IMG/VR virus record: IMGVR_UViG_3300028666_000022
Location: 275,899 to 339,898 of that record
Direction: 5' to 3' (one strand)
Length of the DNA: 64,000 nucleotides
Numbering within the stretch: position 1 is the first letter of the stretch; the number at the start of each line of letters is the position of its first letter. A model generated the notes under the pieces. The model saw nothing but the letters and a program-made list of their open reading frames with translations, did no database searches and had not been told where the DNA came from. Below are positions 1,292-64,000 of this stretch, piece after piece. The position numbers were made by a program, and so were the translations under genes.

Positions 1292-1394
1292 GAAATGGAA
1301 TTTCATATAAATACTGAAAAAATAATTGTAAAATATTGATCTTTTTCGTAAATATTTAGTATTTATATTTGTAGTTCAAATAAACAACATTGAT

Positions 1395-1556
1395 ATGGGA
1401 TATTCAAAAGACAAAGACAGGACATTAGGCATAAGACTTGATGTAGATCTCAAAAAGAGATATTTAAAATTTATTAGTGATAATGGATATTCATTATCGA
1501 AAAGAATAAGAGTTTTATTGGAAAATGATATGAAAAATGAAAAAAACAGTATTTGA
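1395..1556 (+). CDS. Small ribbon-helix-helix-like protein (53 aa, not in ORF track)
   Basis: MGYSKDKDRTLGIRLDVDLKKRYLKFISDNGYSLSKRIRVLLENDMKNEKNSI*; beta strand plus two helices; TATATTTG at 1364-1371; overlaps next gene. Confidence 0.65.
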   Translation: MGYSKDKDRTLGIRLDVDLKKRYLKFISDNGYSLSKRIRVLLENDMKNEKNSI

Positions 1557-3009
1557 TGACATTAGTAGTTTTACTAAGGAAGAACTGAAAATCTGGTTTA
1601 ACACAGATAATATTGGTGGTCATAAATGTAGAGAAAATTTTATTTTTGAACATTATCCTGATTTACATAAAGAAATTCTTGAATATTCAAAAATAAACCC
1701 AGATGTCATTAATTGGAAAGAAAAACTATTTAATTATTTAAATAATTTAATTGAAAATCCTAAATGTAAAAATTGTGGAAAAACTTTACATATTAGTACA
1801 AAACATAAAAATTATCCAACATTTTGTTCAAAAGAATGTTATGATAAAAAACGAAATTTTAAACCAAAAAAAGAAAATATTGATATTAGTGCTTTTTCTA
1901 AAGAAGAATTAAAAGAATGGTTTTTATGTAATAATTATGGTGGGTATAAAACACGGGAAGATTGGCTTAAATTACACTATCCAATTCTTTTAGATAAAAT
2001 ATTAAAAAATACTAATGAAATTAATTTAAAATTAAAGGCAAAAATTTATTTATATATTTATGATTTAAAAGAAAGTCCGAAATGTCAAGAATGTGGAAAT
2101 AAATGTAATTTTAGGGATCATTTAACAGAAGGTTTTACTAAATATTGTTGCAATAAATGTTCTCTTAAACAAAGTAGAAAATATAATGGGAAAAATAAAG
2201 TGAATATAGAAAATTATGCATCATTCTCTGATTTTATTATTAAGAATTATAAAAATGGTATGAGTTCAAACGAATGTTACATAAAAGAATCTAATCCAAT
2301 TGAATATAATGAAATTATTAATCTACCAATTAACTTAAATAATATTCCTTGGAGAGAGAAATTATATAATTATACACATGGAATCATAGAAAGACCAATA
2401 TGTCCTGAATGTGGTAAACCAGTGAAATTTAAAAATTTTAATAAGGGTTATAGAAAATTTTGTTCAAAAAAATGTCAAATAGTTTTTATTAATAATATAA
2501 TAAGAAATAATTATAATATTATTATAGCTAAGAGAAAAGAAACTAATTTAAAAAAATATGGTGTTGAACATGCTGCGCAAAATAAAGAAATACAGGAAAA
2601 AATACAACAAACTATAATTGAAAAGTATGGAGAAATTTATGCAAAATATATTCCAAAATATAATATTAATTCAATAATATATTTAGATATTTTAGCTGAA
2701 AAATTAAATCTTCATATACAACATGCTTTAAATGGTGGGGAAAAAAGATTTATAAAATATTGGATTGATGGATATAGTGAAAAATATAATGTATGTATAG
2801 AATGGAATGAAAAATATCATTACACAAAAAAGAATATCGAAAAAGATATAAAAAGAAATAAATTTTTAGTTGAAAATTTTAGGTGTAAGATGATTTATAT
2901 TAAAGAAAAAGAATTTTTAAAAGATGTTGAGAAAAATATTGAGATATTATGTAATGAAATAAATGAATATATTAAAACTAAAACTGTTTTAGAACCCACT
3001 AAATACTGA
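1537..3009 (+). CDS. Free-standing homing-endonuclease-like protein (3 Zn-ribbon repeats, KYGV repeat, C-terminal PD-(D/E)XK-like nuclease)
   Basis: Three PxCxxCG...(F/Y)C-x-x-x-C units; KKYGVEHAAQ; WIDGYSEKYNVCIEWNEKYH; antisense within the neck-gene cluster. Confidence 0.7.
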   Translation: MKKTVFDDISSFTKEELKIWFNTDNIGGHKCRENFIFEHYPDLHKEILEYSKINPDVINWKEKLFNYLNNLIENPKCKNCGKTLHISTKHKNYPTFCSKECYDKKRNFKPKKENIDISAFSKEELKEWFLCNNYGGYKTREDWLKLHYPILLDKILKNTNEINLKLKAKIYLYIYDLKESPKCQECGNKCNFRDHLTEGFTKYCCNKCSLKQSRKYNGKNKVNIENYASFSDFIIKNYKNGMSSNECYIKESNPIEYNEIINLPINLNNIPWREKLYNYTHGIIERPICPECGKPVKFKNFNKGYRKFCSKKCQIVFINNIIRNNYNIIIAKRKETNLKKYGVEHAAQNKEIQEKIQQTIIEKYGEIYAKYIPKYNINSIIYLDILAEKLNLHIQHALNGGEKRFIKYWIDGYSEKYNVCIEWNEKYHYTKKNIEKDIKRNKFLVENFRCKMIYIKEKEFLKDVEKNIEILCNEINEYIKTKTVLEPTKY

Positions 3010-4117
3010 TAATTGGAAATTTGGGAGGCTGAAATTTCATAGTTTCATTAATATTGGACGCTATCTGTAATCTTTCTCCGGTTAAATTTACCTGAGCAAG
3101 TTTATCTAATTGTTCAAGTATTATTTTTTCTGTATCTTCTTTAAGTTTAAGTCCTTCATCTAACAAATGTCTATAGTCCATAGAAAGTGCGGCTTCTGAA
3201 GGGGAAAAAACTTTACCCTCAAAAAATCCTCTAACATTACCTAAAACAATTTTTACCTTGGCAATTAAAAAATTTCTTATTTGTTGACGAGCAACATCAT
3301 TTAATTTTCCCCATTCTAGTATCTTTGTAGGGGCATCTGAAGGTAATCTAACCACATCTGGATTATCTTCTAAACATTTGTCTCTGTTATCTGAATTTGT
3401 ATCATAATAAAAGTACCATATAAGATAACCGTTCCAATGTTTCCCCCATTTGCCAGCTATTTCATACCTATCGCCCGGCACAGGATATAAATGTAACATT
3501 TTTTCTCCTGTTTCTAAACCAGTAATTCTATACGTAAGTGTTGATTGCAACATACGTTTTTTCATCATATTGTCCTGACTCATCAAAAGCGTACTGTATA
3601 TGGGTTGTACTAAATTACCGGGACGAGAGAACATATTCGTGCCCGTTATTCCAGCACCCATTGAATTTAAAGCAAATGGATCAACAAGTCCTAAATCTGC
3701 AGATCCGGGTGTGGACCATAAAACCTCATTTACTTCTCTATTCTTAGGAATTATATAATGTTGTGTATGACCAGAAGTAATAATAAAATCACGTTTTAAT
3801 TCCCAACCTTTAGCTGCAGGAGCATTAGTACCCAGACCTACTTGTTTAGAGTAAGCATAGGTAAAAGATTCCATGTAGTGGTTAGATTTAGTTGTAAAAG
3901 CAGTAAGAAAATCACCAGAAAGATCCATTCCTTCAAGGTTAATCCAATTTTGTTGAATTAGCCAACTATTAACTAAAGAAGAATAATCTTCAACAACCAT
4001 TTCAAGATAAGAGATCATCATGTCATCGGTAAGTTCGAATGGTCTAAGAGGCCAACCCATTTCATGTTTGATTTGTGTAAATAATTTATTTCTATCTGGT
4101 GTTGTGATTAAAGCCAT
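2999..4117 (-). CDS. Neck/head-tail adaptor protein (T4 gp13-like)
   Basis: 372 aa; N-terminal IKHEMGWP..FELTDD and C-terminal LGNVRG...MDYRHLLDEG patterns; late motif upstream. Confidence 0.65.
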   Translation of the reverse strand: MALITTPDRNKLFTQIKHEMGWPLRPFELTDDMMISYLEMVVEDYSSLVNSWLIQQNWINLEGMDLSGDFLTAFTTKSNHYMESFTYAYSKQVGLGTNAPAAKGWELKRDFIITSGHTQHYIIPKNREVNEVLWSTPGSADLGLVDPFALNSMGAGITGTNMFSRPGNLVQPIYSTLLMSQDNMMKKRMLQSTLTYRITGLETGEKMLHLYPVPGDRYEIAGKWGKHWNGYLIWYFYYDTNSDNRDKCLEDNPDVVRLPSDAPTKILEWGKLNDVARQQIRNFLIAKVKIVLGNVRGFFEGKVFSPSEAALSMDYRHLLDEGLKLKEDTEKIILEQLDKLAQVNLTGERLQIASNINETMKFQPPKFPIISI

Positions 4118-4134
4118 ACAAGATTAATATTTAA

Positions 4135-4143
4135 TATAAATAC
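4135..4143 (-). promoter_or_regulatory. Putative late promoter GTATTTATA (representative; see findings for all copies)
   Basis: Same motif lies ~14-55 nt upstream of at least 15 mostly structural gene starts, always in coding orientation. Confidence 0.7.
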
Positions 4144-4195
4144 TTGATAAAATAATATATGATATGTTTAATTATAAAATTATTTTGTTTATGTT

Positions 4196-4227
4196 TGTAA
4201 CAAAATTAAATTATTTTCGTATATTTG
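4196..4227 (+). promoter_or_regulatory. ECF-like promoter TGTAAC-N16-CGTA overlapping host-type TATATTTG
   Basis: TGTAAC 4196-4201, CGTA 4218-4221; heads the plus-strand accessory block. Confidence 0.6.
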
Positions 4228-12283: not shown

Positions 12284-12554
12284 AATATATGAAATTATGA
12301 ATAAATTAAAAAATTTCTATGAAAATTATTTAGAATATTATTTTTTCGTATTCAAAATATATTTAAAACTATTTTTAATATCAGCATCAGGATTTTTTAT
12401 TTTACAAGGAATAGCTTCATTTTTATTATTTTATGAACAAATATATTCAGAAGAAATAAATTTTAATAATTTAATGATTGGTCCTACTATTTTTGGAATT
12501 ATGATTTGTTTTATTTTTGGAATGCAAATACATCGTTATAATAAATTGAATTAA
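12273..12554 (+). CDS. Small 2-TM membrane protein
   Basis: Two hydrophobic segments. Confidence 0.5.
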   Translation: MEYKIYEIMNKLKNFYENYLEYYFFVFKIYLKLFLISASGFFILQGIASFLLFYEQIYSEEINFNNLMIGPTIFGIMICFIFGMQIHRYNKLN

Positions 12555-15121
12555 TGATACACAAACCCACCAAAGAACAAGAAAAAATATTTACTTATAT
12601 TGAAAAACGACCTGAAAATCTATTAATTGAAGCATACGCCGGAGCTGGGAAAAGTTCCACTGTTGTTGAAGCAGTTAGGTTATTACCTAAAGATAAGTCA
12701 ATAACATTTTTAGCTTTTAATAAACACATTCAAGAAGAATTAAAAACTAAATTACCTGAACATGTGAGGTGTTATACAACATATGGTTTAGGAAATGCAG
12801 CAATTAAAAGAAAATATGGTGATAAGATAGTGTTCGATGAATTCAAAGCAGACAAAATAATTCAAAAGAAAGCTAAAAATTGGGATTTAAATAACGAATT
12901 TAAAAATGAAGAGAAAATAAATTATTATCTAAATAATATAAAAAAATTAGTTAATCTCTGTAGATTAACATTAACAGTAAAGCCAGATTACATACCGTTT
13001 TTAGCTGAAAGACATGATATCAATAATTTAAGTAAACCAAAAGATATTAAAAGAGTTCTAAAAGTACTAGATGAAATGACTATAGATAGAACTTCTTATG
13101 ATTATACCGATATGGTTTATTTACCAGCAGTTGATAATTCAATTTGGATGTTTCCTCAAGATTATGTAATCGTGGATGAATGTTTACCAAAAGAAACATA
13201 TATTTTAACAACAGAAGGTAAAATACAAATAAATTTATTGTGTACTAATTATAATAAAAATATAAAAATACCTAATGTTATTACATATAATGAAACTATA
13301 AATAAATTTGAAGAAAAGAAAATAAATTGTGTTTGGTGTAATGGGATTAAGGATGTTTATTGTGTTAAATTAGGCACTAAAAGAAAATTGTATGCTACAG
13401 TTAATCATAAATTTTTAACATTAAATGGATGGAAAAGATTAGATGAACTAAAAATTGGAGATGCTATACTATCGAATTATCATAATCAACCATATCATTC
13501 GATATTAAATAATATACAAAAAGAAATTTTTGTTGGTTCAATTCTTGGTGATGGACATTTATATAGTTTAAGTAAAAATATAGGAAGAATTAGTGTTATT
13601 CATGGTGAAAAACAAAAGAAATATATTGAATGGAAAGGACAATTTTTTAATTCTAAAATAAATAAAATTGAAAAAAATGGTTATAGTCAAAAGGTTGCAT
13701 ATACTTTTCGAACATTAGGATATTATTTTGATTTAAATATCGAAGATAGTATAAAATCAATAACTCCACAATCATTAGCAATTGCTTGGATGGATGATGC
13801 TAATTTAAGTAAATTTGAAAATTGTTCAAAATTATATTCATTGGCTACAACAAAAAACTATGTCCAATTATTAAATAAAACAATATTTAATAATTGGAAT
13901 ATCGAATCTAGTGTTAGAACACAAAAAAGTTCATCAACAAAAAAAGAATATTATTATTTAGAATTTAATAAAAAAAATACCGAAAAAATATCTGAATTAA
14001 TTTCACCGTATATTCATGAATCAATGAAATATAAAATTTTAAAAAAACATTATAATAATATTAATAATGAAAATTGGAATATTATTGATGATAAATACTC
14101 AAATTTAGGTTGTATTGTTGTTACTGATGAATATAAATTTCATAAAACCGAAAAAACATATGACATGAGTGTTGAGGATAATCATAATTTTATTATTACT
14201 TCGAAAAAAGATAGTAAAAATAGAGGTGGAGCGAGTAATAATGGAATTGTTGCACATAATTGTCAGGATACTGGGTCAGCACAACAAAAAATAATTGAAA
14301 AAATATTAAAAAAAGATAAATTAACTGGTAAAATTTTAGGTAGATTAATCTCGGTGGGTGATAAATTTCAAAACATATATGCATTTAATGGTAGTAGTGA
14401 TAAATGTTTTGAATGGTTCAGAAATTTTCCTAATACAAAAGTTTTACCTCTTTCATATTCTTTTAGGTGCGCCAAAAACATCATTTTAAAAGCAAATGAA
14501 ATTGTACCAGATATTAAAGCATTGGATGATGCACCTGATGGTATTGTTAGAGATGGTGATGTATTAAGTGAAGCTCAGAGTGGTGATTTTGTTTTATGTA
14601 GAACAACAATGCCATTGGTTAAATTATTTTTTCAATTCTTATTACAACATAAAAAAGCAATTATTAAAGGCAGTGATATTGGAGTGCATCTTATTGAATT
14701 AATTGGTAAAATTAATAATATTAAACAATTAATTAGTTTTTGGGAAAAAGAATTAGATGATTATAGTAATGATTTAAAATCAAAAGGTATTTTAAATCCA
14801 GATGAACATAGTGGTTACATTGCTTTAGCTGATAAAGTTTCAACATTATTATTTCTAGCTAAACTTTCAAATAGTATCGAAGATCTTAAAGATAAAATAA
14901 GAACAATATTTAGTGATGAAATTGAGGGTATTGTGCTCAGTTCTATCCACAAAATCAAGGGGTTAGAGTCAAATAGAGTATTTATTGTTAGACCAGATTT
15001 ATTACCGTTAAAAACTGCAAGAGGATGGCAAAAAGATCAGGAAATGAATTTATCATATGTCTCAATAACGAGGGCCAAATTAGAATTAATTTATGATAGA
15101 GAATGGTCAGATTTAAAATAA
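12554..15121 (+). CDS. UvrD/Rep-family SF1 helicase containing an intein
   Basis: Walker A AYAGAGKS; Walker B VIVDE|CQD split by intein; VGDKFQNIYAF, SFRC, SSIHKIKGLE, YVSITRAK. Confidence 0.92.
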   Translation: MIHKPTKEQEKIFTYIEKRPENLLIEAYAGAGKSSTVVEAVRLLPKDKSITFLAFNKHIQEELKTKLPEHVRCYTTYGLGNAAIKRKYGDKIVFDEFKADKIIQKKAKNWDLNNEFKNEEKINYYLNNIKKLVNLCRLTLTVKPDYIPFLAERHDINNLSKPKDIKRVLKVLDEMTIDRTSYDYTDMVYLPAVDNSIWMFPQDYVIVDECLPKETYILTTEGKIQINLLCTNYNKNIKIPNVITYNETINKFEEKKINCVWCNGIKDVYCVKLGTKRKLYATVNHKFLTLNGWKRLDELKIGDAILSNYHNQPYHSILNNIQKEIFVGSILGDGHLYSLSKNIGRISVIHGEKQKKYIEWKGQFFNSKINKIEKNGYSQKVAYTFRTLGYYFDLNIEDSIKSITPQSLAIAWMDDANLSKFENCSKLYSLATTKNYVQLLNKTIFNNWNIESSVRTQKSSSTKKEYYYLEFNKKNTEKISELISPYIHESMKYKILKKHYNNINNENWNIIDDKYSNLGCIVVTDEYKFHKTEKTYDMSVEDNHNFIITSKKDSKNRGGASNNGIVAHNCQDTGSAQQKIIEKILKKDKLTGKILGRLISVGDKFQNIYAFNGSSDKCFEWFRNFPNTKVLPLSYSFRCAKNIILKANEIVPDIKALDDAPDGIVRDGDVLSEAQSGDFVLCRTTMPLVKLFFQFLLQHKKAIIKGSDIGVHLIELIGKINNIKQLISFWEKELDDYSNDLKSKGILNPDEHSGYIALADKVSTLLFLAKLSNSIEDLKDKIRTIFSDEIEGIVLSSIHKIKGLESNRVFIVRPDLLPLKTARGWQKDQEMNLSYVSITRAKLELIYDREWSDLK
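13181..14260 (+). mobile_element. Intein (360 aa) with LAGLIDADG endonuclease in the helicase Walker B motif
   Basis: Starts CLPKET, block B ATVNHKF, LAGLIDADG-like GSILGDG and AIAWMDD, ends GIVAHN|C. Confidence 0.92.
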
Positions 15122-17646: not shown

Positions 17647-17888
17647 TATTAATTGTTTTTTAAATAAAGTTATTTTGTAATTATTGAGATTGTATTTTCT
17701 CTATAAATAAATAGTAAAAATAATCCTAAAGAGCAATGGTTAGATAAGATTTTTTTATAGAAATTAGATAATTATTTTAGTATGTTTAAAAACATTATAA
17801 AAAATTATAAAAATGTGGATTATTAGATAAGTGAAAGTGTGTTAATTACTTAAGATATGTTAGTGTATAATTATTTATGAATATGATT

Positions 17889-18785: not shown

Positions 18786-18929
18786 GGCATTAATATTATA
18801 TCTATAAATACTTTCGTAACGATAAAGAATATTAAATTTTATAAAAAATTAGAGAAAATAGTTTTATATGATTAATTATTTGAAAATCCAAGAGATTGGA
18901 GTAAATTTAAAAAAGATTTTAGACTTTAC

Positions 18930-26612: not shown

Positions 26613-26738
26613 TTTATTAAATTCTTGTAACTAATAATCTAATTTTTATATAAATACATCTGCTTTGCGAAAAAGTATAAAAAATAATAAAATTTCTTGT
26701 TTTATTAAAAATTTATACTTATATTCTCACCATTATTT

Positions 26739-28646: not shown

Positions 28647-28740
28647 GTGAAAATATTTTAATATAAATAGTTTATAATATCAATTATTTTTCTTAAATTT
28701 AGGTTTCAGATAATAATGTATTTATGATAAATATTCTTGA

Positions 28741-33366: not shown

Positions 33367-33367
33367 A

Positions 33368-35164: not shown

Positions 35165-35186
35165 ATTAATAATTTATAATAAATAC

Positions 35187-38806: not shown

Positions 38807-38885
38807 TTCTATAAATTTTTATAATTTATTATAAATACTAAAATTTTTGTCAAAAATCAATACTTTTATAATAAATACAATAAAT

Positions 38886-42729: not shown

Positions 42730-42755
42730 TGTAACAAAATAAAATTATTTACGTA
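42730..42755 (+). promoter_or_regulatory. ECF-like promoter TGTAAC-N16-CGTA
   Basis: Exact spacing match; upstream of the Pnkp-containing run. Confidence 0.6.
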
Positions 42756-42769
42756 AATATTAATCATAT

Positions 42770-49876: not shown

Positions 49877-49918
49877 TTATAATAAATTATATTTTATTAT
49901 AAATACTAAAAATATAAT

Positions 49919-50529: not shown

Positions 50530-50567
50530 TTTTATAATTTATTATAAATACTTATAATAGTAAAAGA

Positions 50568-51897: not shown

Positions 51898-51945
51898 GAT
51901 ATTTAAATTAAACTTATTATAAAAACCATTTTATCACATTAATAA

Positions 51946-51971
51946 TACGAATATTTAAATATTTTGTTACA
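51946..51971 (-). promoter_or_regulatory. ECF-like promoter TGTAAC-N16-CGTA
   Basis: gttaca 51966-51971 and tacg 51946-51949 on plus strand. Confidence 0.6.
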
Positions 51972-52030: not shown

Positions 52031-54502
52031 TTATACACCACCTAAACCAAAACTCCCATTAGTTCCTCCTGCCCCAAAATTTGATTTTGTTGTTTTATCT
52101 TTCAATGATTGTGGAGCATAAGTAACTGTTTTATTATCTGGAGCAAGTCTTAATGTACCTCCACCTAATTCAACATATTTTTTCAATATGTCATATTTAA
52201 CATTAATTGGAGTTGTTTTAGCTGCTCTACCAATTATACCCATTTGAGGATTGATTAAAATCGTATTAAAAGCTGAATTAAATAATTTATCTACTTCTGC
52301 AGCATTGTTAGGGTCTAATTTAGAAAATTTTTCTTTTACACTAAATCCGAAAACTTCATTAATTTTTTCAGATTTTTTTGATTTTGCAACATTTTCATAT
52401 TGTTTAAATTGTTTGTCGATTATTTCATCAAGTTTTTTTAATGTTTTAGATTTTGTACTTTCATTAATAACTGATTTTTTACCATTTACTTTTTCTTCAA
52501 GTCTTGCACGAATATATTTTCTTACTCTAGTTTCTGATTCATCCATATTTTCATCAACTTCGTTTTGATCTTCAGAAGGAGATATTGTAACATTAGTTGC
52601 TCCATCACCTGCCCCTCCTGTAACTGTAACATTACCTTGGGTATATGCTTTTGTTGATGTCTTCGTAGATGTTTTTGACGCAGTAGATGTTTTAGCAACA
52701 TCACCTTTCTTTTCTTTAGTTGATCCAGATGATGGTTTATCTTCATTTTCATTCATAGCAATATTAACAACTTTGTTTTGTGCATCAACATTTATATCAA
52801 CACCAGTTGTAGAAGTTGGTTCAATTGTATTAACACCTAAATTTTGTGCATCTGGAGCAAATCCTGATTCTGGTGTTTCTTCACTAGTTTCAATTTCTTC
52901 TTCATCTTCTTTAATCATATTTGGTTGAACTTCAACATTTGCAGCATCTACCATTCCAGCTTCTGCAACTGCTGATTTAAATTTACTTAAGTCTGCCGTA
53001 CCCTTAGAACCAACCTGATTTTTTATTGTGGTTAAAATACTATTGATATTAATTGGTTGTTCACCAGCCTTTGTTGCGGCAATATTTAATTTGTTTAATG
53101 TTTGTCCTAATTCAGCAGCTAATTTTTCTAATTCTTTAACTGCAGTATCTTTAACACCTTTTTGATAATTTTGTGTTATTTCAGTACCTAATTGTTGTAA
53201 ACCTGATGTTACACTATTAACTTTACTTGAAACAGCATTTGAAATGCCTTGTGCAGCACCTTTAACTGCTCCACCAATCTTATTTCCTAACATTTTCCCA
53301 ACGTTACCAACACCACCCCAATTAAGTTCGTTGATTTTATCTAATTTATCTTCATAAGAAGCTTCATTCATTGATTGAGTGTATGGTGTTAATTTTTCTG
53401 CATATTCATCATGACCATAATCATTTTTTAATGAATCAATAATTTCGGGAGTAATGAAAATAGCAACAGTTTCCAAATCACCATCATTCATTCCATCATT
53501 ATGTGCATTAGCATAACCACTTACAAGATTACCCATTTCTTCATCACCACATTCGGCAATACTTTCTTTTGTGTATCCTCTTGATTCTGCATATTGTGTA
53601 AATCCACCACACTCGGCACATAATTCTTTACTTTCTTCAACTTCTTCTGCTGGCATACTAGATTCTAAATCATTAATATCTTCTTGACCAACAACTTTAA
53701 GTATTTTATTAGCCATTGCTTTTCTATCTTCAATTTCAATTTCTGGAAATTTATCTTTGAATGAAGCTAAAAATGAATTTACATATGATTTAACTTGAGA
53801 ATCAGTCATTTTTGTTTTTCTGATTTTATCTGTTAATTTACCAACAGATTTTTCGATTTCTTTATTAGGTTCATCAACTTCAACACCTGCATCTGCTGGA
53901 ACTTCTTCAGTTGATTCTTCTCCTTCTGGATTTTCTTCACCAGTTTCTAGTTCAGGTTTTTCTTCTGGGACTTCAGATGTTTCTGGTTCTTCGGCAGGTA
54001 CTTCTTCACCAGTTTCTGTTGGTAGTTCCTCTGTTGAAGGTTCTTCGATTTCTGGTGTTTCTTCAGCACTTGCTGCTGCATCTAAATCACCGATTTTTTC
54101 ACTAGCAGCAGCAATTTCTTTTCCTGCAACATCTTCTGTTAACACCATTTTACTACCAGTTTTATTTGGTTTTAAACCAACTGCTTCATTAATGGTATGA
54201 AACATCATATTTCTTTGTTTATCTGCTTCAGATAAAGATGTATATTGATATGAAGTAATATTTTCTAATCCACCAATATAGGCAAAATCAGATACATTAG
54301 GATCTTGTTTAGTACCAGCTTTTTTAATATAATAATTATGATTTTCTTTTATAATACCATAAGCAACACCATCAGCAGCTCTTTTATAATCAATAAGATT
54401 ACCTAATGTACGTGTTAATGATTCTTTAACTGAGGTTTTATTTACATTACCTAAATTTCTTAATCTTTCGTAATATGCCTCTTGCGATGTATGTTTTTTC
54501 AT
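52031..54502 (-). CDS. Large acidic protein, probable internal head/prohead-core protein
   Basis: 823 aa; E/P-rich linkers; many (I/L/V/M)xE sites; late motif 54545-54553. Confidence 0.55.
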   Translation of the reverse strand: MKKHTSQEAYYERLRNLGNVNKTSVKESLTRTLGNLIDYKRAADGVAYGIIKENHNYYIKKAGTKQDPNVSDFAYIGGLENITSYQYTSLSEADKQRNMMFHTINEAVGLKPNKTGSKMVLTEDVAGKEIAAASEKIGDLDAAASAEETPEIEEPSTEELPTETGEEVPAEEPETSEVPEEKPELETGEENPEGEESTEEVPADAGVEVDEPNKEIEKSVGKLTDKIRKTKMTDSQVKSYVNSFLASFKDKFPEIEIEDRKAMANKILKVVGQEDINDLESSMPAEEVEESKELCAECGGFTQYAESRGYTKESIAECGDEEMGNLVSGYANAHNDGMNDGDLETVAIFITPEIIDSLKNDYGHDEYAEKLTPYTQSMNEASYEDKLDKINELNWGGVGNVGKMLGNKIGGAVKGAAQGISNAVSSKVNSVTSGLQQLGTEITQNYQKGVKDTAVKELEKLAAELGQTLNKLNIAATKAGEQPININSILTTIKNQVGSKGTADLSKFKSAVAEAGMVDAANVEVQPNMIKEDEEEIETSEETPESGFAPDAQNLGVNTIEPTSTTGVDINVDAQNKVVNIAMNENEDKPSSGSTKEKKGDVAKTSTASKTSTKTSTKAYTQGNVTVTGGAGDGATNVTISPSEDQNEVDENMDESETRVRKYIRARLEEKVNGKKSVINESTKSKTLKKLDEIIDKQFKQYENVAKSKKSEKINEVFGFSVKEKFSKLDPNNAAEVDKLFNSAFNTILINPQMGIIGRAAKTTPINVKYDILKKYVELGGGTLRLAPDNKTVTYAPQSLKDKTTKSNFGAGGTNGSFGLGGV

Positions 54503-54580
54503 TTTTATGTTTTTAAGATATACGTTATTTACTTTATATTTTTTTATAAATACTTAATTTTTATATAAAATCTATTTCTT

Positions 54581-54842: not shown

Positions 54843-55655
54843 TTATTTATTTTCGAATTCTTTTAGAGTTAATTCTTTAGTTAAATACTCATTTTTCATA
54901 TTAATGAGTTTTTCCATATATCCAGTGTTTCTTAATATTTTAAAAACAATATTTTCTGTTGAAAATTCACCAGATTTATCTAAACCAGTTTGTCTATATT
55001 TTTTTATTTTATTTTTTAATTGCTCATATTTTTTTATGAAATTCTCATCGCTTTTATTAGTTTCAAGTTCATCAATAGAGTTTATTAAATCAGCAGCTTT
55101 TAGTTGAACATTAGCCATATCAATATTTATAATTTTTTTGATTGGTTTTCTAATCCACTCGTTTTTTATTAGTGAATATATTCCTGAAGAATGATGAGGT
55201 TCATTAACATCTTGAAAATATAATTCAACATCATGACCTTTTACTTGTATTGGTAATTTATCTGCCCATAATTGTTTTTTTAATTTAAAGAAATCGCCAA
55301 CAAAATCCTTATTTTCAGAAATTTGATTAAAATCTAAAATAATGTGTACGTCTAAATCAGAATTTTCATTATAATTATAATTAGCTAAGCTTCCTGTTAA
55401 TACAATATCACTAAATTTAAGATTTTCAATATCAGAGAATTCAATAAATCTTTTGGCATTTTTTAATAAAATTTTTCTTATTTCTGGTTTCATTTTATCT
55501 TCGGATTCCCAAATAAGTGGATTTAATACATCATTCATTTTAATTGATGACACATCAACAGCATCTGGTTCAATTACTTCCTTTAGAATATCAGAAATAT
55601 GATTTTTTTTCCAAAATTTAGAAGACCATTTTCTTGGATTATTATTTTCAACCAT
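54843..55655 (-). CDS. Pol-beta superfamily nucleotidyltransferase under the late motif
   Basis: LTGSLANYNYNENSDLDVH and VELY motifs; late motif 55675-55683. Confidence 0.8.
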   Translation of the reverse strand: MVENNNPRKWSSKFWKKNHISDILKEVIEPDAVDVSSIKMNDVLNPLIWESEDKMKPEIRKILLKNAKRFIEFSDIENLKFSDIVLTGSLANYNYNENSDLDVHIILDFNQISENKDFVGDFFKLKKQLWADKLPIQVKGHDVELYFQDVNEPHHSSGIYSLIKNEWIRKPIKKIINIDMANVQLKAADLINSIDELETNKSDENFIKKYEQLKNKIKKYRQTGLDKSGEFSTENIVFKILRNTGYMEKLINMKNEYLTKELTLKEFENK

Positions 55656-55775
55656 GTTAAATTTTAATGTTTTATATAAATACTATTGATGTGTTAATGA
55701 AATAAATTTTTATTTAACATAAATAGTTTATGATTATTGTTAATAATTAGTATTTATGTTAAATTAATACCTAAA

Positions 55776-57491: not shown

Positions 57492-60400
57492 ATGAGTTTA
57501 AGTTGTTCAACAATTATAATTACAGAAGGTAATATATCTAACAATATTGAATATATTGAAAGAGTTACTGATGGTATTGTTATTCATGATCCTGCTGGAG
57601 AAACTGTTATTATTCAAGATTTTGATTCAATTTCGCCATCACCAATTCCTCATTATACAGCAGAAAATGTTGCAAATAAAAAATGTAATTTATTAAATCC
57701 TAATAATACAACATATCCAACAACACTTGCGATTAGTAATGCAGTTTCATTTATTACTGGAATTACATCAAATTCATTAACGGGTGTTACTAATTTAGGA
57801 TTAGGTACTGGAATTTATTATTCGAAAATAAATAATAATGTTCATTTAAAATCACTAGTTGGATTAGGTAATATTAGTATCACTTCAAATAACAATGAAA
57901 TTTTTTTAAGTGGTTTTACAACAAATATTGCTTGGGGTAATATTAGTGGTTTTATTTCTGGTCAAACGGATTTATATAATTGTTTAAATACAAAATTAAA
58001 AATAATCGATTTTAATGTCTATAGTGGAACAACATTAAGTTTAATTAACACTAAATTAAACACTAATGTTTTCAATGCTTTTACTGGAATAACAATACCA
58101 AATAATTATTATAACAAGACTCAGATTAATAATTATACTGGTAATACCTTAAGTAATATTAATACAAGAATATTAAAAACTGATTTTAATACCTTTACAG
58201 GTACTACTTTACCCTCTAACTATTATAATAAAACTCAGATTAATGATTATTCTGGCAATACGTTGACAAATATTAATACTAAAGTACCTAAATTAATTGC
58301 TTCAACAGGACAGATTATTTACAAAAATAGTATACAATTGACAGGCTGTAGTAATATGGTATATTGTGATACAAAAAAGAGTTATATATTAAGTAGAGGT
58401 TCAAGTGCAATAGGTGGTGATTCTGGTGTATTTGGTGGATGTAATAATAATGCAAATGCTGTTTGTTCTATTATATTAGGTGGTCAATGTAATTATATTG
58501 ATTCAACTAGTTTACGTTCAGCTATAATTGGTGGACAAAACATTAGTTTAAGTGGAAGTACATATGATGATACGCTTGCAGTTAATTGTTTAGCACTAAT
58601 ATGTACGCCAAGTGGTTCTGGTAATATATTAGCTTTAGATAATATCACTAAAAAAATATGTGTTGTTAGTTCAACTACTTTTGGTAGTATTACTGGAGCA
58701 ACAAATGGATTAAATAAAAATAATGAAAATATTAGTTTAGGTGGATTATTAACTAATGACACTACAATTAGTGGTAATTCTACATACGGTTTAAGTTTGA
58801 ATAATTTAAGTAATTTTAATGTTAATTATTGTAATTCAATAATAACAGATACTAATGAAACACCAAGAGGATTAAAATATGCTGCAGATTATAGTAATAC
58901 ATATTTAAATAGATCGATTGTTGATGCTGCTTATGTAACTGGTAAAACAAACACAAAATTAGATAAGACTACTTTTAGTACATATACAGGCACAACAGTA
59001 CCTGCAAATTATTATAATAAGACTCAAATCAATAGTTATACTGGTAGCACATTAACCAATATTAATACAAGATTAATAAAAACAGATTTTAACACATATA
59101 CTGGAAGTACTAATACTTTGATTGGTACAAAATTAAACACGAGCGTTTTTAATACTTTTACGGGTACTACAGTACCGAATGATTATTACAATAAAACCCA
59201 AATAAATACATACTCAGCTAGTACTTTAACAAATATTAACACAAGGTTATTAACCACAACCTTTAATACTTTTAGTGGTACTACTTTACCTGTGATTTAT
59301 TATAATAAAACTCAAATTAATAGTTATACTGGAAGCACTAATACTTTGATTGATACAAAATTAGATAAAACTATTTTTAGTAATTATACAGGAACAACAA
59401 TACCAAATACATATTACAATAAGACTCAAATTAATAATTATAGTGGTAACACAGCTACTTCAATTAGTAATAAGTTAAACACCACTACCTTTAATACATT
59501 TACAGGAACTACCTTACCTGCAAATTATTATAATAAGACTCAAATCAATAGTTATACTGGTAGTACCTTAACTAATATTAATTCAAGATTATTAAAAACA
59601 GATTTTAATACCTTTACGGGAACAACATTACCTAATAATTATTATAACAAAACTCAGATTAATAATTATTCGGGTAATACAAATACTCTAATAGGTGCAA
59701 AAGTTAGTACAACAACATATAATACATATACTGGCACAACAGTTCCAGCAAACTATTATAACAAGAGTCAAATTAATAGTTATAGTGCAAGTACATTAAC
59801 CAATATAAATAGTAAGTTAGGAACAATATCTGGTGCAACAGGTAGAGTTGCAATATATAATACAAATAGTCAGATATGTGGAAACAGTAATTTTATTTAT
59901 AATGGTACTACATTAACTCTTGGTACAAATTCTACTGGAAATAATCAAATTATTAATGCTACACAGGGTACTGAACAAGCACCAGCATTAACAATTGGAA
60001 ATTGGACACTTGGTACGGGTTGGCAATATTTAACCACACCTAATAGGTTAGACAAAAATGCTGCTGGAACTGGTATTATAACACAACTTAGTGGTGCAAC
60101 AATTACACCGGGTACCACTTATAAAGTAACTATTATTGTTACTGCTATTACTGGAAGTACAGCAACATATAGTTTAGGTGGAATATCTGGTCAACCATTA
60201 ATTGCTGCTCAAACATATTCTGAATTAATAACAGCAAATACTAATGGAAAATTAATCATTACCCCAGTTGCAACTGCACTGAGAATGACAATTTCTTTGA
60301 TTAGTATAACACCCATATCAAACGGCAATCTGTCGGTTGACGGCAATATAACTCAGCATGGTAATGGTGTTTTAACTAACTCAAACTTAACTCCAAGTGT

Positions 60401-61874
60401 TGCAGGACAAATACCATTTTATACAGGTGTTGGCAATCAAACAACAAATAGTCCAAGGTTTGCACTTTCACCAAATGGAGGAATTAATTTTATTGATGTT
60501 GTTCCAACCATTTCTCTTAGTGCTACTAATAATAATTCATCCTATAGTTTTGGAATTAGACAATTAACCAGTACAAATGCCTTTTTTTTAACTTATTATG
60601 GTACTGGATTTGGAACTACTGCAAAAAGAGGTGCTGTTGAACTTTGGAATTATCAAAATGGATACATGGCATTTGCAAATAATAATGTTGAATTAATGAG
60701 ATTAACATCTGGTGGTAACTTAGGTATTGGAACAACAATTCCTACCAAAGATTTATCATTTGGTGGTAACGTAGTAAGAACAATTTGGACAGAAAGAAAT
60801 ACAAATGCTGCAACAGCAGGACAAAATTTAACATTATCTGTTGGTGGAGCATTTTCTGGTGGAACTGATTTAGCTGGTGGAAATTTAATTCTTTCTTCAG
60901 GAATTGCGACAGGTGCTGGTAATTCAAGTATTATATTTCAAACAGCTAATGCTGGTACATGTGGTACTGTAGATAGAACACCCACAACCAGTATGACAAT
61001 AACAAATGGAATTGTTGGTATAGGCATGGCTCCAATAGTTTCTGGTGGTGGTAGTGGTTACAATCTGTACTTAAGTACTGGTATAATGTTTGATGTTGGT
61101 CAGAATTTCAGAGCAGACCAAAATGGAATACATATGTCATCAGCAATAGGTCATCCATTAGTAATTGATACTGTATTAAATAATAATAATATAAATATAC
61201 AACCACAAGGTGCAGGTAATATAAATTTATTGCAAGCAACTGGTACTGGACAAGTTGCTATTGATGGACAAAATGCTAGAATATTTGGAATGCTTAGAAA
61301 TACAACTACCAATACTGCAGGATTAAATCTTACAATAAATGCGGGTGGGGCAACTAATGCAGCAACTAATAAAAATGGCGGAATATTATACAATACACCG
61401 GGAATATCAACAGGTAGTGGTACAACAAGTATTGTACTCCAATCATTAAATCGTGCTTCAACAACAGGAACTGCTGATAATGCAACTGAAGATAGGTTTA
61501 TTATACCATCAGTAAAAAATTTAATAAATAACACGGTAGTTAGATTATTTGATGTGACACTACCAACACTTACAAATGCTGGTGGTACAATTAATTATAC
61601 CATATTTTCTACCGATGGCGCAAATATACAATCAATTACTGGTAGGATTGTTTATGATGCAGTAAATTTATCTGGTGTTTATACTACACAATTTACACCA
61701 ACAAATAATACTGCTGCAGTTACAACTGGAACATTAGTACCTACTTGGAGTATAGTATCTGGAACTAATAAAATTACTATAAATATTAGTGTTGCTAGTT
61801 CATTAACACCAACAACATTACAAATTAGATATACATTAAAAAATACTAGTAATCAAACAATAACTCAATTATAA
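57492..61874 (+). CDS. Tail fibre-like protein
   Basis: 1460 aa, T/N/G-rich; 38-aa repeats; GGxxN repeats; ELMRLTSGGNLGIGTT fibre motif. Confidence 0.75.
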   Translation: MSLSCSTIIITEGNISNNIEYIERVTDGIVIHDPAGETVIIQDFDSISPSPIPHYTAENVANKKCNLLNPNNTTYPTTLAISNAVSFITGITSNSLTGVTNLGLGTGIYYSKINNNVHLKSLVGLGNISITSNNNEIFLSGFTTNIAWGNISGFISGQTDLYNCLNTKLKIIDFNVYSGTTLSLINTKLNTNVFNAFTGITIPNNYYNKTQINNYTGNTLSNINTRILKTDFNTFTGTTLPSNYYNKTQINDYSGNTLTNINTKVPKLIASTGQIIYKNSIQLTGCSNMVYCDTKKSYILSRGSSAIGGDSGVFGGCNNNANAVCSIILGGQCNYIDSTSLRSAIIGGQNISLSGSTYDDTLAVNCLALICTPSGSGNILALDNITKKICVVSSTTFGSITGATNGLNKNNENISLGGLLTNDTTISGNSTYGLSLNNLSNFNVNYCNSIITDTNETPRGLKYAADYSNTYLNRSIVDAAYVTGKTNTKLDKTTFSTYTGTTVPANYYNKTQINSYTGSTLTNINTRLIKTDFNTYTGSTNTLIGTKLNTSVFNTFTGTTVPNDYYNKTQINTYSASTLTNINTRLLTTTFNTFSGTTLPVIYYNKTQINSYTGSTNTLIDTKLDKTIFSNYTGTTIPNTYYNKTQINNYSGNTATSISNKLNTTTFNTFTGTTLPANYYNKTQINSYTGSTLTNINSRLLKTDFNTFTGTTLPNNYYNKTQINNYSGNTNTLIGAKVSTTTYNTYTGTTVPANYYNKSQINSYSASTLTNINSKLGTISGATGRVAIYNTNSQICGNSNFIYNGTTLTLGTNSTGNNQIINATQGTEQAPALTIGNWTLGTGWQYLTTPNRLDKNAAGTGIITQLSGATITPGTTYKVTIIVTAITGSTATYSLGGISGQPLIAAQTYSELITANTNGKLIITPVATALRMTISLISITPISNGNLSVDGNITQHGNGVLTNSNLTPSVAGQIPFYTGVGNQTTNSPRFALSPNGGINFIDVVPTISLSATNNNSSYSFGIRQLTSTNAFFLTYYGTGFGTTAKRGAVELWNYQNGYMAFANNNVELMRLTSGGNLGIGTTIPTKDLSFGGNVVRTIWTERNTNAATAGQNLTLSVGGAFSGGTDLAGGNLILSSGIATGAGNSSIIFQTANAGTCGTVDRTPTTSMTITNGIVGIGMAPIVSGGGSGYNLYLSTGIMFDVGQNFRADQNGIHMSSAIGHPLVIDTVLNNNNINIQPQGAGNINLLQATGTGQVAIDGQNARIFGMLRNTTTNTAGLNLTINAGGATNAATNKNGGILYNTPGISTGSGTTSIVLQSLNRASTTGTADNATEDRFIIPSVKNLINNTVVRLFDVTLPTLTNAGGTINYTIFSTDGANIQSITGRIVYDAVNLSGVYTTQFTPTNNTAAVTTGTLVPTWSIVSGTNKITINISVASSLTPTTLQIRYTLKNTSNQTITQL
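58080..59820 (+). repeat. Nine PxxYYNK(T/S)QINxY repeats, mostly 38-aa/114-nt period
   Basis: Two copies near 58095-58260 and seven between ~59000 and 59820. Confidence 0.85.
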
Positions 61875-61888
61875 AATAACATATAAAT

Positions 61889-62518: not shown

Positions 62519-62535
62519 AATAAAAACATATTAAA

Positions 62536-63048
62536 ATGAAATTACGAACAATTACATTAGATAAATTACAAACAGGAGATGTTCTTTGTTTTGAAAAAAA
62601 TAGTGGAATATCTCGTGCAAATCAAATTATAACACGTTCTCATATTGGACATACTGGAATATATATAAATAATGGTGAGAAATTAGTTTACGAATCCTTA
62701 TCAAATGGATTTCATCCAAGACCAATTCAAGAAAGTATCGATAAACACACAGTTTCTGTTTATATCCAACGTCCATTATTTAATTTTAGCTCGAATGAAT
62801 TAGAACGAGAATGTAAAAAGAAAATAGGTACTAAATACTATTTTATGGGATTATTTTATCAATTAAAACACAATGTTTGGGGTGGTTGGGATGGTACTCA
62901 GGATTTATCACATGGAGCAATTTGTTCTAGTATTGTAAATTGTATTTTTAACATACTTACTGAACGTTTCTTAACGTGGTATAAAGATACTCCAGCAGAT
63001 ATTTGGGAAAATAGAGTTGATTTTGAAAGTTTTGAATTATTATTATAA
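62536..63048 (+). CDS. Permuted papain-like NlpC/P60 enzyme (YiiX/YebB-like)
   Basis: LQTGDVL, GHTGIY (His first), AICSSIV (Cys late), TPADI. Confidence 0.75.
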   Translation: MKLRTITLDKLQTGDVLCFEKNSGISRANQIITRSHIGHTGIYINNGEKLVYESLSNGFHPRPIQESIDKHTVSVYIQRPLFNFSSNELERECKKKIGTKYYFMGLFYQLKHNVWGGWDGTQDLSHGAICSSIVNCIFNILTERFLTWYKDTPADIWENRVDFESFELLL

Positions 63049-63053
63049 TTTAA

Positions 63054-63161
63054 ATAAATACTGGTTGTTATGGAAATTCAGCAAACTCAGTACCTCTAGC
63101 TGGATCATTTATGAATGGATATATTTATGATGTTAAAGCAAGAACTGGTCTAGTTTTTTAA
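63054..63161 (+). pseudogene. Start-less remnant resembling a LamG-type C-terminus
   Basis: TGCYGNSANSVPLAGSFMNGYIYDVKARTGLVF*; no plausible start; coding-like composition. Confidence 0.4.
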
Positions 63162-63277
63162 CAACTAATGATTTACTTAATTTATATAATACTGAAAAAG
63201 TACATATTTATTACAATAATATTAATGATCAATTAAAATAAATTTAATTAATACTGTGTTGAACATATTATTCCTTA

Positions 63278-63865
63278 TTAACAATAAGGAATATTTTTTA
63301 TATTATCTCTTTTTAATTTATCGGTTGAAGTAGTTTTATTTGAAATAAAACTTTCAGTATAATTTCTAATAAAAAGTTCTTTGATTTTAATTGGTGCTTT
63401 TTTGAAAGCAATAAAATCAATTTCGTCACCATCATTACTTAATAATGTAACATCAATATCGCTCCAATTGATATAATCATAATATGATTCGGTTTGAGGT
63501 TCATTATTATAATCTCCACTATAATTTTTTTCTGTAATATTAATGCCAACATTATTTCCATTAAAATCAACAATAAATTTAATTGGTTCTTTATTGAGAT
63601 CAAACACATATTCAAAATCTAATTGATATTTTATATTTAAATTAGATGCCTCATTTCCTTCTTCCCAATCACCACTAATTTGTGCCTCAGCAATTTTAGT
63701 TTTTAAATTATTTTTATTTAAAAGTGAATCACAAATGAATTGTTTTTGAAAATCTTCGTTTTGTAACAATGAATTAATTTCCTCTTCTTTTAAATATTTT
63801 TCATTACCAAGAAAATCAAAATTAGATATTTCTTCATTAATTATATTAATAATATTTTTTTTCAT
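63278..63865 (-). CDS. Hypothetical late protein, probable head protein
   Basis: MKKNIINIINEEI leader; late motif 63879-63887; ECF-like TGTAAC-N17-CGTA at 63910-63936. Confidence 0.55.
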   Translation of the reverse strand: MKKNIINIINEEISNFDFLGNEKYLKEEEINSLLQNEDFQKQFICDSLLNKNNLKTKIAEAQISGDWEEGNEASNLNIKYQLDFEYVFDLNKEPIKFIVDFNGNNVGINITEKNYSGDYNNEPQTESYYDYINWSDIDVTLLSNDGDEIDFIAFKKAPIKIKELFIRNYTESFISNKTTSTDKLKRDNIKNIPYC

Positions 63866-64000
63866 TTTAATTGTTTAATATAAATACTTAAACAACGTAC
63901 AATTATTAATACGATTAATTAATCATTTTTGTTACAAATTTATTTAAAATCTTCAACAAAGATTTCAATATTATTATAATTACGAAAACTATATATTTTC

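What the first reader, a model, noticed from the sequence alone, without database searches (positions are those of the whole stretch)
1306..63887. Putative late promoter is the reverse complement of the T4 late promoter
Seen: the plus strand carries (T/A)ATAAATA(C/G/A) just upstream of minus-strand genes at 1306, 4135, 17702, 18803, 26649, 28662, 35178, 38830, 49898, 50543, 54545, 55675 and 63879. GTATTTATG lies upstream of plus-strand structural genes at 28718 and 55750. The coding-strand consensus is therefore GTATTTAT(A/G/T), ~14-55 nt before the start. Established: T4 gp55 recognises TATAAATA on the non-template strand. Inference: this lineage has a late sigma with different specificity, or the motif binds an activator or acts at RNA level. 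It also marks which hypothetical genes are late.
Basis: partly seen in the sequence, partly recalled or inferred. Interest (0 to 1): 0.6.

Follow-up and report, generated by a model that had tools for sequence, protein, structure and literature searches.

The report
Late-gene promoter of giant phages
A strictly conserved 14-base signal, (G/C)TATTTAT-A-NN-AAA, sits just upstream of the virion genes of this 340-kb phage and all its uncultured relatives. It is most likely their late promoter: built like the phage T4 late promoter, but with a different sequence, and in a phage with no detectable T4 late sigma factor.

Summary
The window is the last 64 kb of a complete 339,898-bp, 25 % GC phage genome with a T4-type portal, terminase, prohead protease, capsid and tail sheath.

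- **Motif:** on the coding strand, a-[G/C]TATTTAT-a-nn-w-A-A lies in front of about 55 genes. The spacing from T8 to the ATG peaks at 14-17 nt.
- **Enrichment:** GTATTTATA occurs 36 times in the 60-nt upstream windows, against 1.3 expected. The opposite orientation is at background, and T4's TATAAATA is depleted.
- **Conservation:** the core is invariant in more than 150 related contigs (23-41 % GC), while the flanks drift. There is no -35 element.
- **Genes served:** every identifiable downstream gene but one (a glycosyltransferase-like gene) is a morphogenesis gene. One site in five directly follows a terminator-like hairpin.
- **Factors:** no gp55, gp45 or phage RNA polymerase was found. 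Two ECF-type sigma genes are conserved across the clade.
- **Other promoter classes:** TGTAAC-N14-CGTATA (ECF-like) and a host-like TAnnTTTG mark other genes.

"Reverse complement of the T4 promoter" is literally true but probably not meaningful. TATAAATA is nearly palindromic, so in the same orientation the two boxes differ at only 2 of 8 positions.

Best reading: a T4-style single-box late promoter with new specificity, read by host polymerase plus a phage factor. That factor may be the second ECF-like sigma, but this is unproven. No RNA data could be obtained.

The parts
1301..1314 (-). L (late) promoter box GTATTTATATGAAA. The annotated ATG (1304-1306) lies inside the box, so the likely true start is the in-frame ATG at 1289-1291.
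4130..4143 (-). L box, 12 nt before the ATG of the 372-aa gene 2999-4117
26644..26657 (-). L box, 31 nt before the 515-aa gene 25065-26612, which heads the operon containing the major capsid protein (23374-25047). The orthologous promoter is invariant in 61 distinct relatives, with an extra CTTTTT element 12 nt upstream.
28657..28670 (-). L box (C at position 1), 10 nt before the prohead protease gene 26739-28646
28718..28731 (+). L box, 9 nt before the 1541-aa gene 28741-33366 (divergent partner of the protease promoter)
35173..35186 (-). L box, 8 nt before the 262-aa gene 34376-35164
38825..38838 (-). L box, 18 nt before the portal gene 35318-38806
38865..38878 (-). Second L box, 58 nt before the portal gene, directly after a terminator-like hairpin.
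49893..49906 (-). L box, 16 nt before the large terminase gene 47834-49876. It lies 16 nt after the terminator hairpin at 49948-49923.
50538..50551 (-). L box, 8 nt before the 159-aa gene 50050-50529
54540..54553 (-). L box, 37 nt before the 823-aa gene 52031-54502
55670..55683 (-). L box, 14 nt before the 270-aa gene 54843-55655
55713..55726 (-). Second L box (C at position 1), 57 nt before gene 54843-55655.
55750..55763 (+). L box, 12 nt before the ATG at 55776 of the gene ending at 57488
63874..63887 (-). L box, 8 nt before the 195-aa gene 63278-63865. An M-class promoter (63909-63936) lies just upstream.
18803..18811 (-). Partial site: GTATTTATA without the downstream AAA, 18 nt before gene 18324-18785. 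Function uncertain.
17707..17714 (-). Only a 49-aa ORF follows, 60 nt downstream. Probably not functional.

Best explanation
The motif is the late promoter of this phage lineage. It is a single 8-bp TATA-like box, [G/C]TATTTAT(A), on the non-template strand. It has no -35 element and is followed 4 nt later by a conserved purine (A13, usually AAA at 12-14), which I infer to be the transcription start.

Host RNA polymerase, redirected by a phage-encoded specificity factor, would start there. The resulting late mRNAs for virion proteins would have very short leaders (about 10-13 nt, occasionally none), which suits a Shine-Dalgarno-independent, Bacteroidota-type host.

The architecture is that of the T4 late promoter, but the sequence specificity is different and the T4 factors are not detectable. 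The best candidate for the factor is the second of two clade-conserved ECF-type sigma genes (G000 117722-118270, co-transcribed with the primase gene).

- **Shown:** the motif, its orientation, its conservation, the gene class it precedes, and the failure of the searches run here to detect gp55, gp45 or a phage polymerase.
- **Inferred:** that it is a promoter, where transcription starts, and which protein reads it.
For: **Enrichment and direction**
- GTATTTATA occurs 36 times against 1.3 expected in upstream windows. The reverse orientation is at background.
- The window has 15 extended matches against 2.4 expected.
- In 13 complete genomes of the clade there are 29-84 matches each, against 4-24 for the same pattern read backwards.

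**Strictness**
- The only tolerated core change is G to C at position 1. Position 13 is a purine in 348 of 351 sites.

**Conservation**
- 314 forward against 76 reverse sites in 80 capsid-gene loci at 23-41 % GC.
- 361 forward against 21 reverse sites in 74 sigma-2 loci, down to 29 % sigma identity.
- It is again the top de novo k-mer in a 40.5 % GC relative, with no -35 signal there.
- At the orthologous capsid-operon promoter the box is invariant in 61 distinct sequences while the flanks vary.

**Gene class**
- The box precedes the portal, large terminase, prohead protease, capsid operon and tail sheath. The other promoter class precedes small early-region genes.

**Transcription-unit starts**
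- 10 of 51 sites follow a terminator-like hairpin within 70 nt, against 15 of 510 control windows (example).

**Start site**
- A minor class has its ATG at positions 13-15 of the motif, and an ATG closer than that is rare (2 sites) apart from ATGs lying inside the box itself.

**Factors**
- No gp55 was found.
- No gp45 or beta clamp was found.
- No T7-like or two-barrel RNA polymerase was found.
- There are two ECF-type sigmas. Sigma-2 is present in 12 of 12 complete relatives.

**Method control and literature**
- The same method recovers 12 coding-strand TATAAATA boxes in the T4 late region.
- T4 late promoters are described as an 8-bp TATA box about one helical turn from the start, AT-rich downstream, with no -35 (PMC2988020; PMC7892883).
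Against: - There are no transcript 5' ends.
- Both phage sigmas have a region 4, and in sigma-2 it is the best-conserved part. That is unexpected for a factor reading promoters with no -35 element.
- The ECF-like M promoters (TGTAAC...CGTATA) could be the target of either sigma.
- Both sigma genes sit behind host-like TAnnTTTG boxes, so no cascade logic assigns sigma-2 to the late class.
- The narrow motif-to-ATG spacing could also mean a role in translation.
Confidence: 0.72

Rival explanations
1. The box is an RNA-level signal in the 5' leader. It could be a translation-initiation enhancer for SD-less late mRNAs, or a processing site that creates short leaders. Transcription would then start elsewhere.
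For: - The spacing to the ATG is tight (peak at 14-17 nt).
- Only 11 of 510 genes have an SD-like motif, so some other initiation signal must exist.
- An A-rich stretch follows the box.
Against: - Many sites lie 8-22 nt after a terminator hairpin, with no other conserved element that could serve as the promoter.
- The box is unchanged at sites 35-70 nt from the ATG, including the invariant capsid-operon promoter at 35-37 nt.
- Some genes have their ATG at positions 13-15, which leaves the box outside any plausible mRNA.
- A strict 8-bp box followed by a purine 4 nt later is promoter-like.
Confidence: 0.1
2. The box is the binding site of a phage late activator or repressor (a DNA-binding protein), not the element read by sigma. 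The true core promoter would be degenerate, AT-rich and read by the host sigma.
For: - The sigma candidates cannot be assigned.
- Sigma-2 keeps a conserved region 4, yet the sites have no -35.
- The capsid-operon promoter carries an additional invariant CTTTTT element.
Against: - The box is asymmetric and strictly directional.
- It keeps a fixed 4-nt distance to a conserved purine.
- It sits where a -10 element would sit.
- No host-type TAnnTTTG box accompanies it.
- Typical activator sites are dyad-symmetric and lie upstream of -35.
Confidence: 0.1
3. A T4-like factor recognises TATAAATA(C) on the template strand, so the promoter really is used "backwards". Alternatively, the box drives antisense or divergent transcription.
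For: - GTATTTATA is exactly the template-strand sequence of the T4 P23 promoter.
- At the two divergent pairs (28657/28718 and 55670/55750), either orientation could serve a gene.
Against: - At co-directional genes such as the portal and terminase, a T4-oriented box would fire into the antisense strand of the upstream gene.
- The forward:reverse ratio is 36:2 in this genome and 361:21 in relatives.
- No gp55 homologue is present.
- The extra conserved positions (S1, A13, A14) lie on the gene-proximal side.
Confidence: 0.03
4. The pattern is a chance product of a 25 % GC genome, or a remnant of a dispersed repeat.
For: The bare 8-mer TATAAATA on both strands of the window is not significantly enriched (45 against 33.8).
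Against: - Shuffle and backward-pattern controls rule out chance.
- The box is the top de novo k-mer in a 40.5 % GC relative.
- The flanks share no similarity beyond about 15 nt.
Confidence: 0.01

Closest known systems
Phage T4 late promoter (TATAAATA) read by gp55, with gp33 and the gp45 sliding clamp
   Same: - A single 8-bp TATA-like box on the non-template strand at the -10 position.
- An A/T-rich downstream segment and no -35 element.
- About 50-70 copies per genome.
- It precedes the portal, terminase, protease, capsid and sheath genes of a phage with T4-type morphogenesis genes.
- The two boxes share 6 of 8 positions in the same orientation.
   Different: - The central two positions are TT, not AA. 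T4's own box is depleted here.
- There is an added G/C at position 1 and a near-invariant purine (A) 4 nt downstream, usually followed by a second A.
- The box-to-ATG distance is about 10 nt shorter than in T4 (13-16 nt against 21-28 nt), and there is no SD.
- No gp55 or gp45 is detectable.
T4-superfamily rhizobiophages (PhiM9, P10VF, Atu_ph04) that lack gp33, and in Atu_ph04 also gp55, and encode RpoE/ECF-like sigma factors
   Same: - A T4-type virion module combined with loss of the canonical late-transcription factors and the presence of ECF-type sigma genes.
- The only cultured-phage match to sigma-2 is the Atu_ph04 ECF sigma (23 % identity).
- The compensation hypothesis is stated in PMC6630229.
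   Different: - No late promoter consensus is given for those phages in the passages read.
- The host phylum differs (Alphaproteobacteria).
- The similarity to sigma-2 is marginal.
ECF (group 4) sigma promoters: a -35 element containing AAC plus a -10 element containing CGT
   Same: - The phage's other promoter class, TGTAAC-N14-CGTATA, fits this pattern.
- Both phage sigmas are ECF-type.
- The late box shares the GTAT core with the M-class -10 element.
   Different: The late box has no -35 partner in either the 25 % or the 40 % GC genome.
Bacteroidota housekeeping promoter (-33 TTTG / -7 TAnnTTTG)
   Same: - A host-type TAnnTTTG is enriched on the coding strand (54 against 31).
- It precedes both sigma genes and the primase gene, which points to a Bacteroidota host and SD-less translation.
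   Different: TATTTATA does not satisfy TAnnTTTG: there is no TTTG, and positions 6 and 8 differ. The late class is a distinct motif.
Sigma cascades of large lytic phages, such as Bacillus phage SPO1 gp28 followed by gp33/34 (from my own knowledge of the literature)
   Same: Successive phage-encoded sigma factors would give host polymerase new promoter specificities for middle and late genes. Three promoter classes are seen here.
   Different: SPO1 late promoters are bipartite (-35 and -10), whereas this late class is a single box.

Membership tests
T4-type late promoter (gp55/gp33/gp45 system) | TATAAATA on the non-template strand upstream of late genes | tested here: not met
   Coding-strand TATAAATA occurs 9 times against 22.4 expected, whereas TATTTATA occurs 48 times against 15.7. 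The same method finds 12 TATAAATA boxes in the T4 late region.
T4-type late promoter (gp55/gp33/gp45 system) | A single -10-position box with no conserved -35 element | tested here: met
   Information content is about 0 from -44 to -1, in both the 25 % and the 40.5 % GC genomes.
T4-type late promoter (gp55/gp33/gp45 system) | A gp55 late sigma is encoded | tested here: not met
   T4 gp55 protein, phrog_234 and phrog_12791 gave no hit at E <= 10. phmmer --max gave a best E of 0.18. hhalign of both sigma alignments against gp55 gave a probability below 1 %.
T4-type late promoter (gp55/gp33/gp45 system) | A gp45 sliding clamp (activator) and gp44/62 clamp loader are encoded | tested here: not met
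   T4 gp45, gp44 and gp62 protein searches and PF09116 found nothing significant. No bacterial beta clamp (PF00712) was found either.
T4-type late promoter (gp55/gp33/gp45 system) | A gp33 co-activator is encoded | not tested
   No gp33 query sequence was fetched. It is a small, fast-evolving protein.
T4-type late promoter (gp55/gp33/gp45 system) | Precedes virion and late genes | tested here: met
   The box precedes the portal, large terminase, prohead protease, capsid operon and tail sheath.
T4-type late promoter (gp55/gp33/gp45 system) | Late transcripts start about 6 nt downstream of the box | not testable with these tools
The only indirect evidence is the conserved purine at position 13 and the genes with an ATG at positions 13-15.
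ECF (group 4) sigma-dependent promoter | Bipartite: a -35 element with AAC and a -10 element with CGT, at fixed spacing | tested here: not met
   The late box has no -35 element. The separate M class does meet this feature.
ECF (group 4) sigma-dependent promoter | A cognate ECF sigma is encoded nearby or in the genome | tested here: met
   Two proteins have Sigma70_r2 and r4, with TIGR02937 scores of 104 and 61 bits. Both are conserved in relatives.
Bacteroidota sigma-A promoter | A -7 box TAnnTTTG, with or without a -33 TTTG | tested here: not met
   The core TATTTATA lacks TTTG, and single-mismatch variants towards it are not enriched. TAnnTTTG forms a separate class.

The most novel reading that the evidence does not exclude
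A cosmopolitan, uncultured clade of 300-370-kb phages of Bacteroidota kept the T4 virion module but replaced the gp55/gp33/gp45 late-transcription machinery. In its place, a two-domain ECF-like sigma (sigma-2, co-transcribed with the primase) reads a -35-less 8-bp TATA box, [G/C]TATTTAT. This launches late mRNAs that are leaderless or carry 10-13-nt leaders. It would be an independent solution to T4-style single-box late transcription, and the first -35-independent promoter class for a group-4 sigma in this phylum.
Probability: 0.3. Interest if true: 0.65.

Novelty: new variant of a known kind. Interest (0 to 1): 0.5.

Why it matters
- **Annotation:** the box is a ready-made, sequence-only marker that sorts about 55-85 hypothetical genes per genome into the late (virion) class, in a large clade of uncultured giant phages (more than 150 contigs in IMG/VR).
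- **Evolution of regulation:** T4-type morphogenesis genes can be driven by a late-transcription system with a different box and no detectable gp55 or gp45.
- **Testable biochemistry:** it yields a defined promoter-factor pairing problem, with two ECF-like sigmas and two phage promoter classes.
- **Tools:** strict, short, orthogonal promoters that work with Bacteroidota polymerase would also be useful genetic parts for that phylum.

Tried and rejected
- **Literature search by motif string.** Searches for GTATTTATA and TATTTATA returned only unrelated papers, plus the T4 P23 template-strand oligo.
- **"Moraphage" paper (PMC12619734).** It describes Bacteroidota jumbo phages of up to 307 kb, apparently a different lineage. 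It gives no promoter data.
- **Nearest cultured phage by terminase.** Flavobacterium phage immuto is only 28.7 % identical. It has a family-A polymerase and no annotated sigma, and shows no strand-biased box (11 against 8 in 100 kb). It is uninformative.
- **Assigning a sigma to the late class** failed in three ways:
  - Cascade logic: both sigma genes sit behind host-like boxes.
  - The prediction that sigma-2 would have a relaxed region 4: it is in fact the most conserved part.
  - Covariation of the M-class -35 flank with sigma sequence: the flank varies within genomes, so there is no usable signal.
- **Profile comparison with gp55.** Neither sigma alignment shows specific kinship with gp55.
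- **E. coli sigma-70 consensus scan.** No enrichment (178 against 168).

Full report
**What the window is.** The window is bases 275,899-339,898 of a complete virus record of 339,898 bp with direct terminal repeats, at 25.1 % GC. It carries T4-type morphogenesis genes:
- a portal (35318-38806, -; Portal_T4 plus an HNH intein);
- a large terminase (47834-49876, -);
- a prohead protease (26739-28646, -; with an intein);
- a major capsid protein (23374-25047, -);
- a tail sheath elsewhere in the genome.

The nearest cultured phage by terminase is a Flavobacterium phage, at only 28.7 % identity. Three things point to a Bacteroidota host. Only 11 of 510 genes have a Shine-Dalgarno-like motif. The Bacteroidota -7 box TAnnTTTG is enriched on the coding strand (54 against 31 expected). 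One of the phage's sigma factors is closest to Bacteroides/Prevotella crAss-like phage sigmas and to the Bacteroidetes ECF model TIGR02985.

**The observation.** Aligning every GTATTTAT in the genome showed a longer and stricter signal on the coding strand: a-[G/C]TATTTAT-a-n-n-w-A-A.
- The window has 15 matches to STATTTAT-N3-WAA against 2.4 expected. No shuffle out of 100 reached 15, and all 15 lie upstream of a gene in the gene's orientation.
- Genome-wide, the 60 nt upstream of 510 ORFs contain GTATTTATA 36 times, against 1.3 +/- 1.2 in 500 dinucleotide shuffles. The opposite orientation is at background (2 against 1.5). T4's own TATAAATA on the coding strand is under-represented (9 against 22.4).
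- 17702 does not fit. It has T at position 1, and a neighbouring CTATTTAT lacks the downstream AA.
- 18803 has only the 9-mer.
- At 1306 the ORF's first ATG is part of the box, and an in-frame ATG 15 nt later fits the normal spacing.
- Two further sites (38865-38878 and 55713-55726) had been missed.

**How strict and how conserved.** I pooled this genome with 80 related loci. No single-base variant of the 8-mer core is enriched in the forward orientation except C for G at position 1 (CTATTTAT with the downstream AA: 124 forward, 6 reverse). Position 13 is A in 329 and G in 19 of 351 sites.

The capsid gene finds at least 156 related contigs in IMG/VR. The best 80 are 75-86 % identical, and many come from 300-365-kb genomes with GC from 23 to 41 %. 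In their flanks the core occurs 314 times forward and 76 times reverse of a gene start.

In a complete relative with 40.5 % GC, where AT-rich words are rare by chance, TATTTATA and GTATTTAT are again the top de novo upstream words. There, 30 of 39 genomic TATTTATA copies lie within 70 nt upstream of a gene in the forward orientation. The 45 nt upstream of the box carry no information, so there is no -35 element.

In 13 complete genomes the extended pattern occurs 29-84 times, against 4-24 for the same pattern read backwards. At the orthologous promoter of the capsid operon, 61 distinct sequences keep the box and the downstream AA unchanged while the flanks drift. In 74 loci around the sigma-2 gene, down to 29 % protein identity, the count is 361 forward against 21 reverse.

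**What it precedes, and what else is there.** The box precedes the portal, terminase, prohead protease, capsid operon, tail sheath and many large unannotated genes. These are concentrated at 104-205, 229-262 and 300-340 kb.

A second motif class, TGTAAC-N14-CGTATAwT, precedes small genes. It is concentrated at 16-62 kb and has the look of an ECF-sigma promoter. It is conserved in most relatives. A third class is the host-like TAnnTTTG, which precedes both sigma genes and the primase gene. The three classes fit an early/middle/late programme.

Ten of 51 late boxes follow a terminator-like hairpin and T-run within 70 nt, against 15 of 510 control windows. One example is the hairpin at 49948-49923, followed 16 nt later by the terminase box. 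These sites therefore look like the starts of new transcription units.

**Where transcription probably starts (inference).** The distance from T8 of the box to the ATG peaks at 14-17 nt, with a second peak at 35-37 nt from the capsid-operon promoter. A small class has the ATG at positions 13-15 of the motif, and at least four of these have no alternative in-frame start. An ATG closer than that is rare (2 sites), apart from ATGs lying inside the box itself. Together with the 99 % purine at position 13, this suggests initiation at A13 (or A14). That would give leaders of about 10-13 nt, or none.

The same procedure on the T4 late region recovers 12 coding-strand TATAAATA boxes, mostly 21-28 nt from the ATG with an SD in between. 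So the geometry here is T4-like minus the SD segment.

**Who reads it.**
- No gp55 was found with the T4 protein, with two PHROG profiles, or with phmmer at maximum sensitivity.
- No gp45, gp44/62 or bacterial beta clamp was found.
- There is no T7-like polymerase, no RNA polymerase beta-subunit (Rpb2) domain, and no DxDGD motif in any ORF of 300 aa or more. Host polymerase must therefore be used.
- Two genes encode two-domain ECF-type sigmas: sigma-1 at 32945-33481 (+) and sigma-2 at 117722-118270 (-). They are 27 % identical to each other.
- Sigma-2 overlaps the end of the primase gene and is present in all 12 complete relatives examined, at 37-61 % identity.
- Neither sigma is specifically related to gp55.

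Two phage-specific promoter classes and two phage sigmas suggest a one-to-one mapping, but I could not assign them. Both genes have host-type promoters. Sigma-2's region 4 is its best-conserved segment, which is odd for a factor that reads -35-less promoters. The M-class flank varies within genomes. An undetected gp55-like factor, or a modified host sigma, remains possible.

**On "reverse complement of the T4 promoter".** GTATTTATA is indeed the template strand of T4 P23. But TATAAATA is nearly its own reverse complement. Read in the same direction, TATTTATA differs from it only at positions 4 and 5. At co-directional genes a T4-oriented box would fire into the antisense strand of the upstream gene. 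The extra conserved positions (S1, A13, A14) have no T4 counterpart.

The sound comparison is architectural. Like T4 late promoters, this is an 8-bp TATA box about one helical turn from the start, A/T-rich downstream, with no -35 and about 50 or more copies per genome (PMC2988020). It has a different specificity and lacks the T4 factors.

There is a published precedent for T4-superfamily phages that lack gp33 or gp55 and carry RpoE-like sigmas: PhiM9, P10VF and Atu_ph04 (PMC6630229). The Atu_ph04 sigma is the only cultured-phage match to sigma-2.

**Verdict.** The motif is real, directional, clade-invariant and tied to virion genes. It is best explained as a late promoter of the T4 architectural type with new sequence specificity (confidence about 0.7). 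The identity of the recognition factor is open, with sigma-2 at about 0.3-0.4.

I found no published description of this box in four full-text searches. I rate it a new variant of a known kind, of moderate interest.

Noticed in passing
window 4196-4222 (+), 42730-42756 (+), 51945-51971 (-), 63909-63936 (-); genome-wide about 45 sites, mostly G000 16-62 kb: A second, bipartite promoter class, TGTAAC-N14-CGTATAwT, with ECF-like -35 and -10 elements. It is forward-only (TGTAAC 28 against 6 expected; CGTATA 29 against 4) and precedes small early-region genes. It is conserved in 9 of 12 relatives, with 25-59 copies each.
   Followed up: partly
window 35318-38806 (-), 26739-28646 (-), 12554-15121 (+): The portal, prohead protease and a UvrD-like helicase each appear to be interrupted by an intein. 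The portal's contains an HNH domain and the helicase's a LAGLIDADG domain.
   Followed up: no
window 1537-3009 (+), 19878-21788 (+), 21857-23266 (-), 38943-40526 (-): There are several large free-standing GIY-YIG/HNH homing-endonuclease genes, interleaved with the structural genes.
   Followed up: no
window 26612-26700 (-) and orthologous sites in L004-L083: The capsid-operon late promoter has an extra invariant CTTTTT element 12 nt upstream of the box. It also has a conserved leader, ATAGTATTAGAT-ACGA, in most of 61 relatives. These may be a promoter-strength element and a leader-level control specific to this operon.
   Followed up: partly
G000 32500-32945 (L001) and downstream of many M promoters: The leader motif (AT)AAACCAA recurs about 7 nt after host-like TAnnTTTG and M-class -10 boxes (14 forward, 0 reverse for ATAAACCAA). 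It may be a conserved initial transcribed or translation-initiation sequence.
   Followed up: no
G000 117722-119303; L084-L095: The sigma-2 gene overlaps the 3' end of the primase gene in nearly all of 12 relatives. In most of them the primase ATG lies only about 5-7 nt after a TAT(A/C)TTTG box, which suggests a leaderless early mRNA.
   Followed up: partly
whole genome G000: Only 11 of 510 ORFs have GGAG, GAGG or AGGA at -20 to -4, so translation initiation is essentially SD-independent.
   Followed up: partly
window 875-1306 (-): The first ATG of this ORF lies inside the late box. The in-frame ATG at 1289-1291 is the likelier start. The same situation occurs at a few sites in relatives (box followed directly by ATG).
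   Followed up: yes
window 57492-61874 (+): This 1460-aa ORF has only a short match to the ribonucleotide reductase N-terminal domain (residues 561-590). It may be an intein-split or fused RNR, or a chance match.
   Followed up: no
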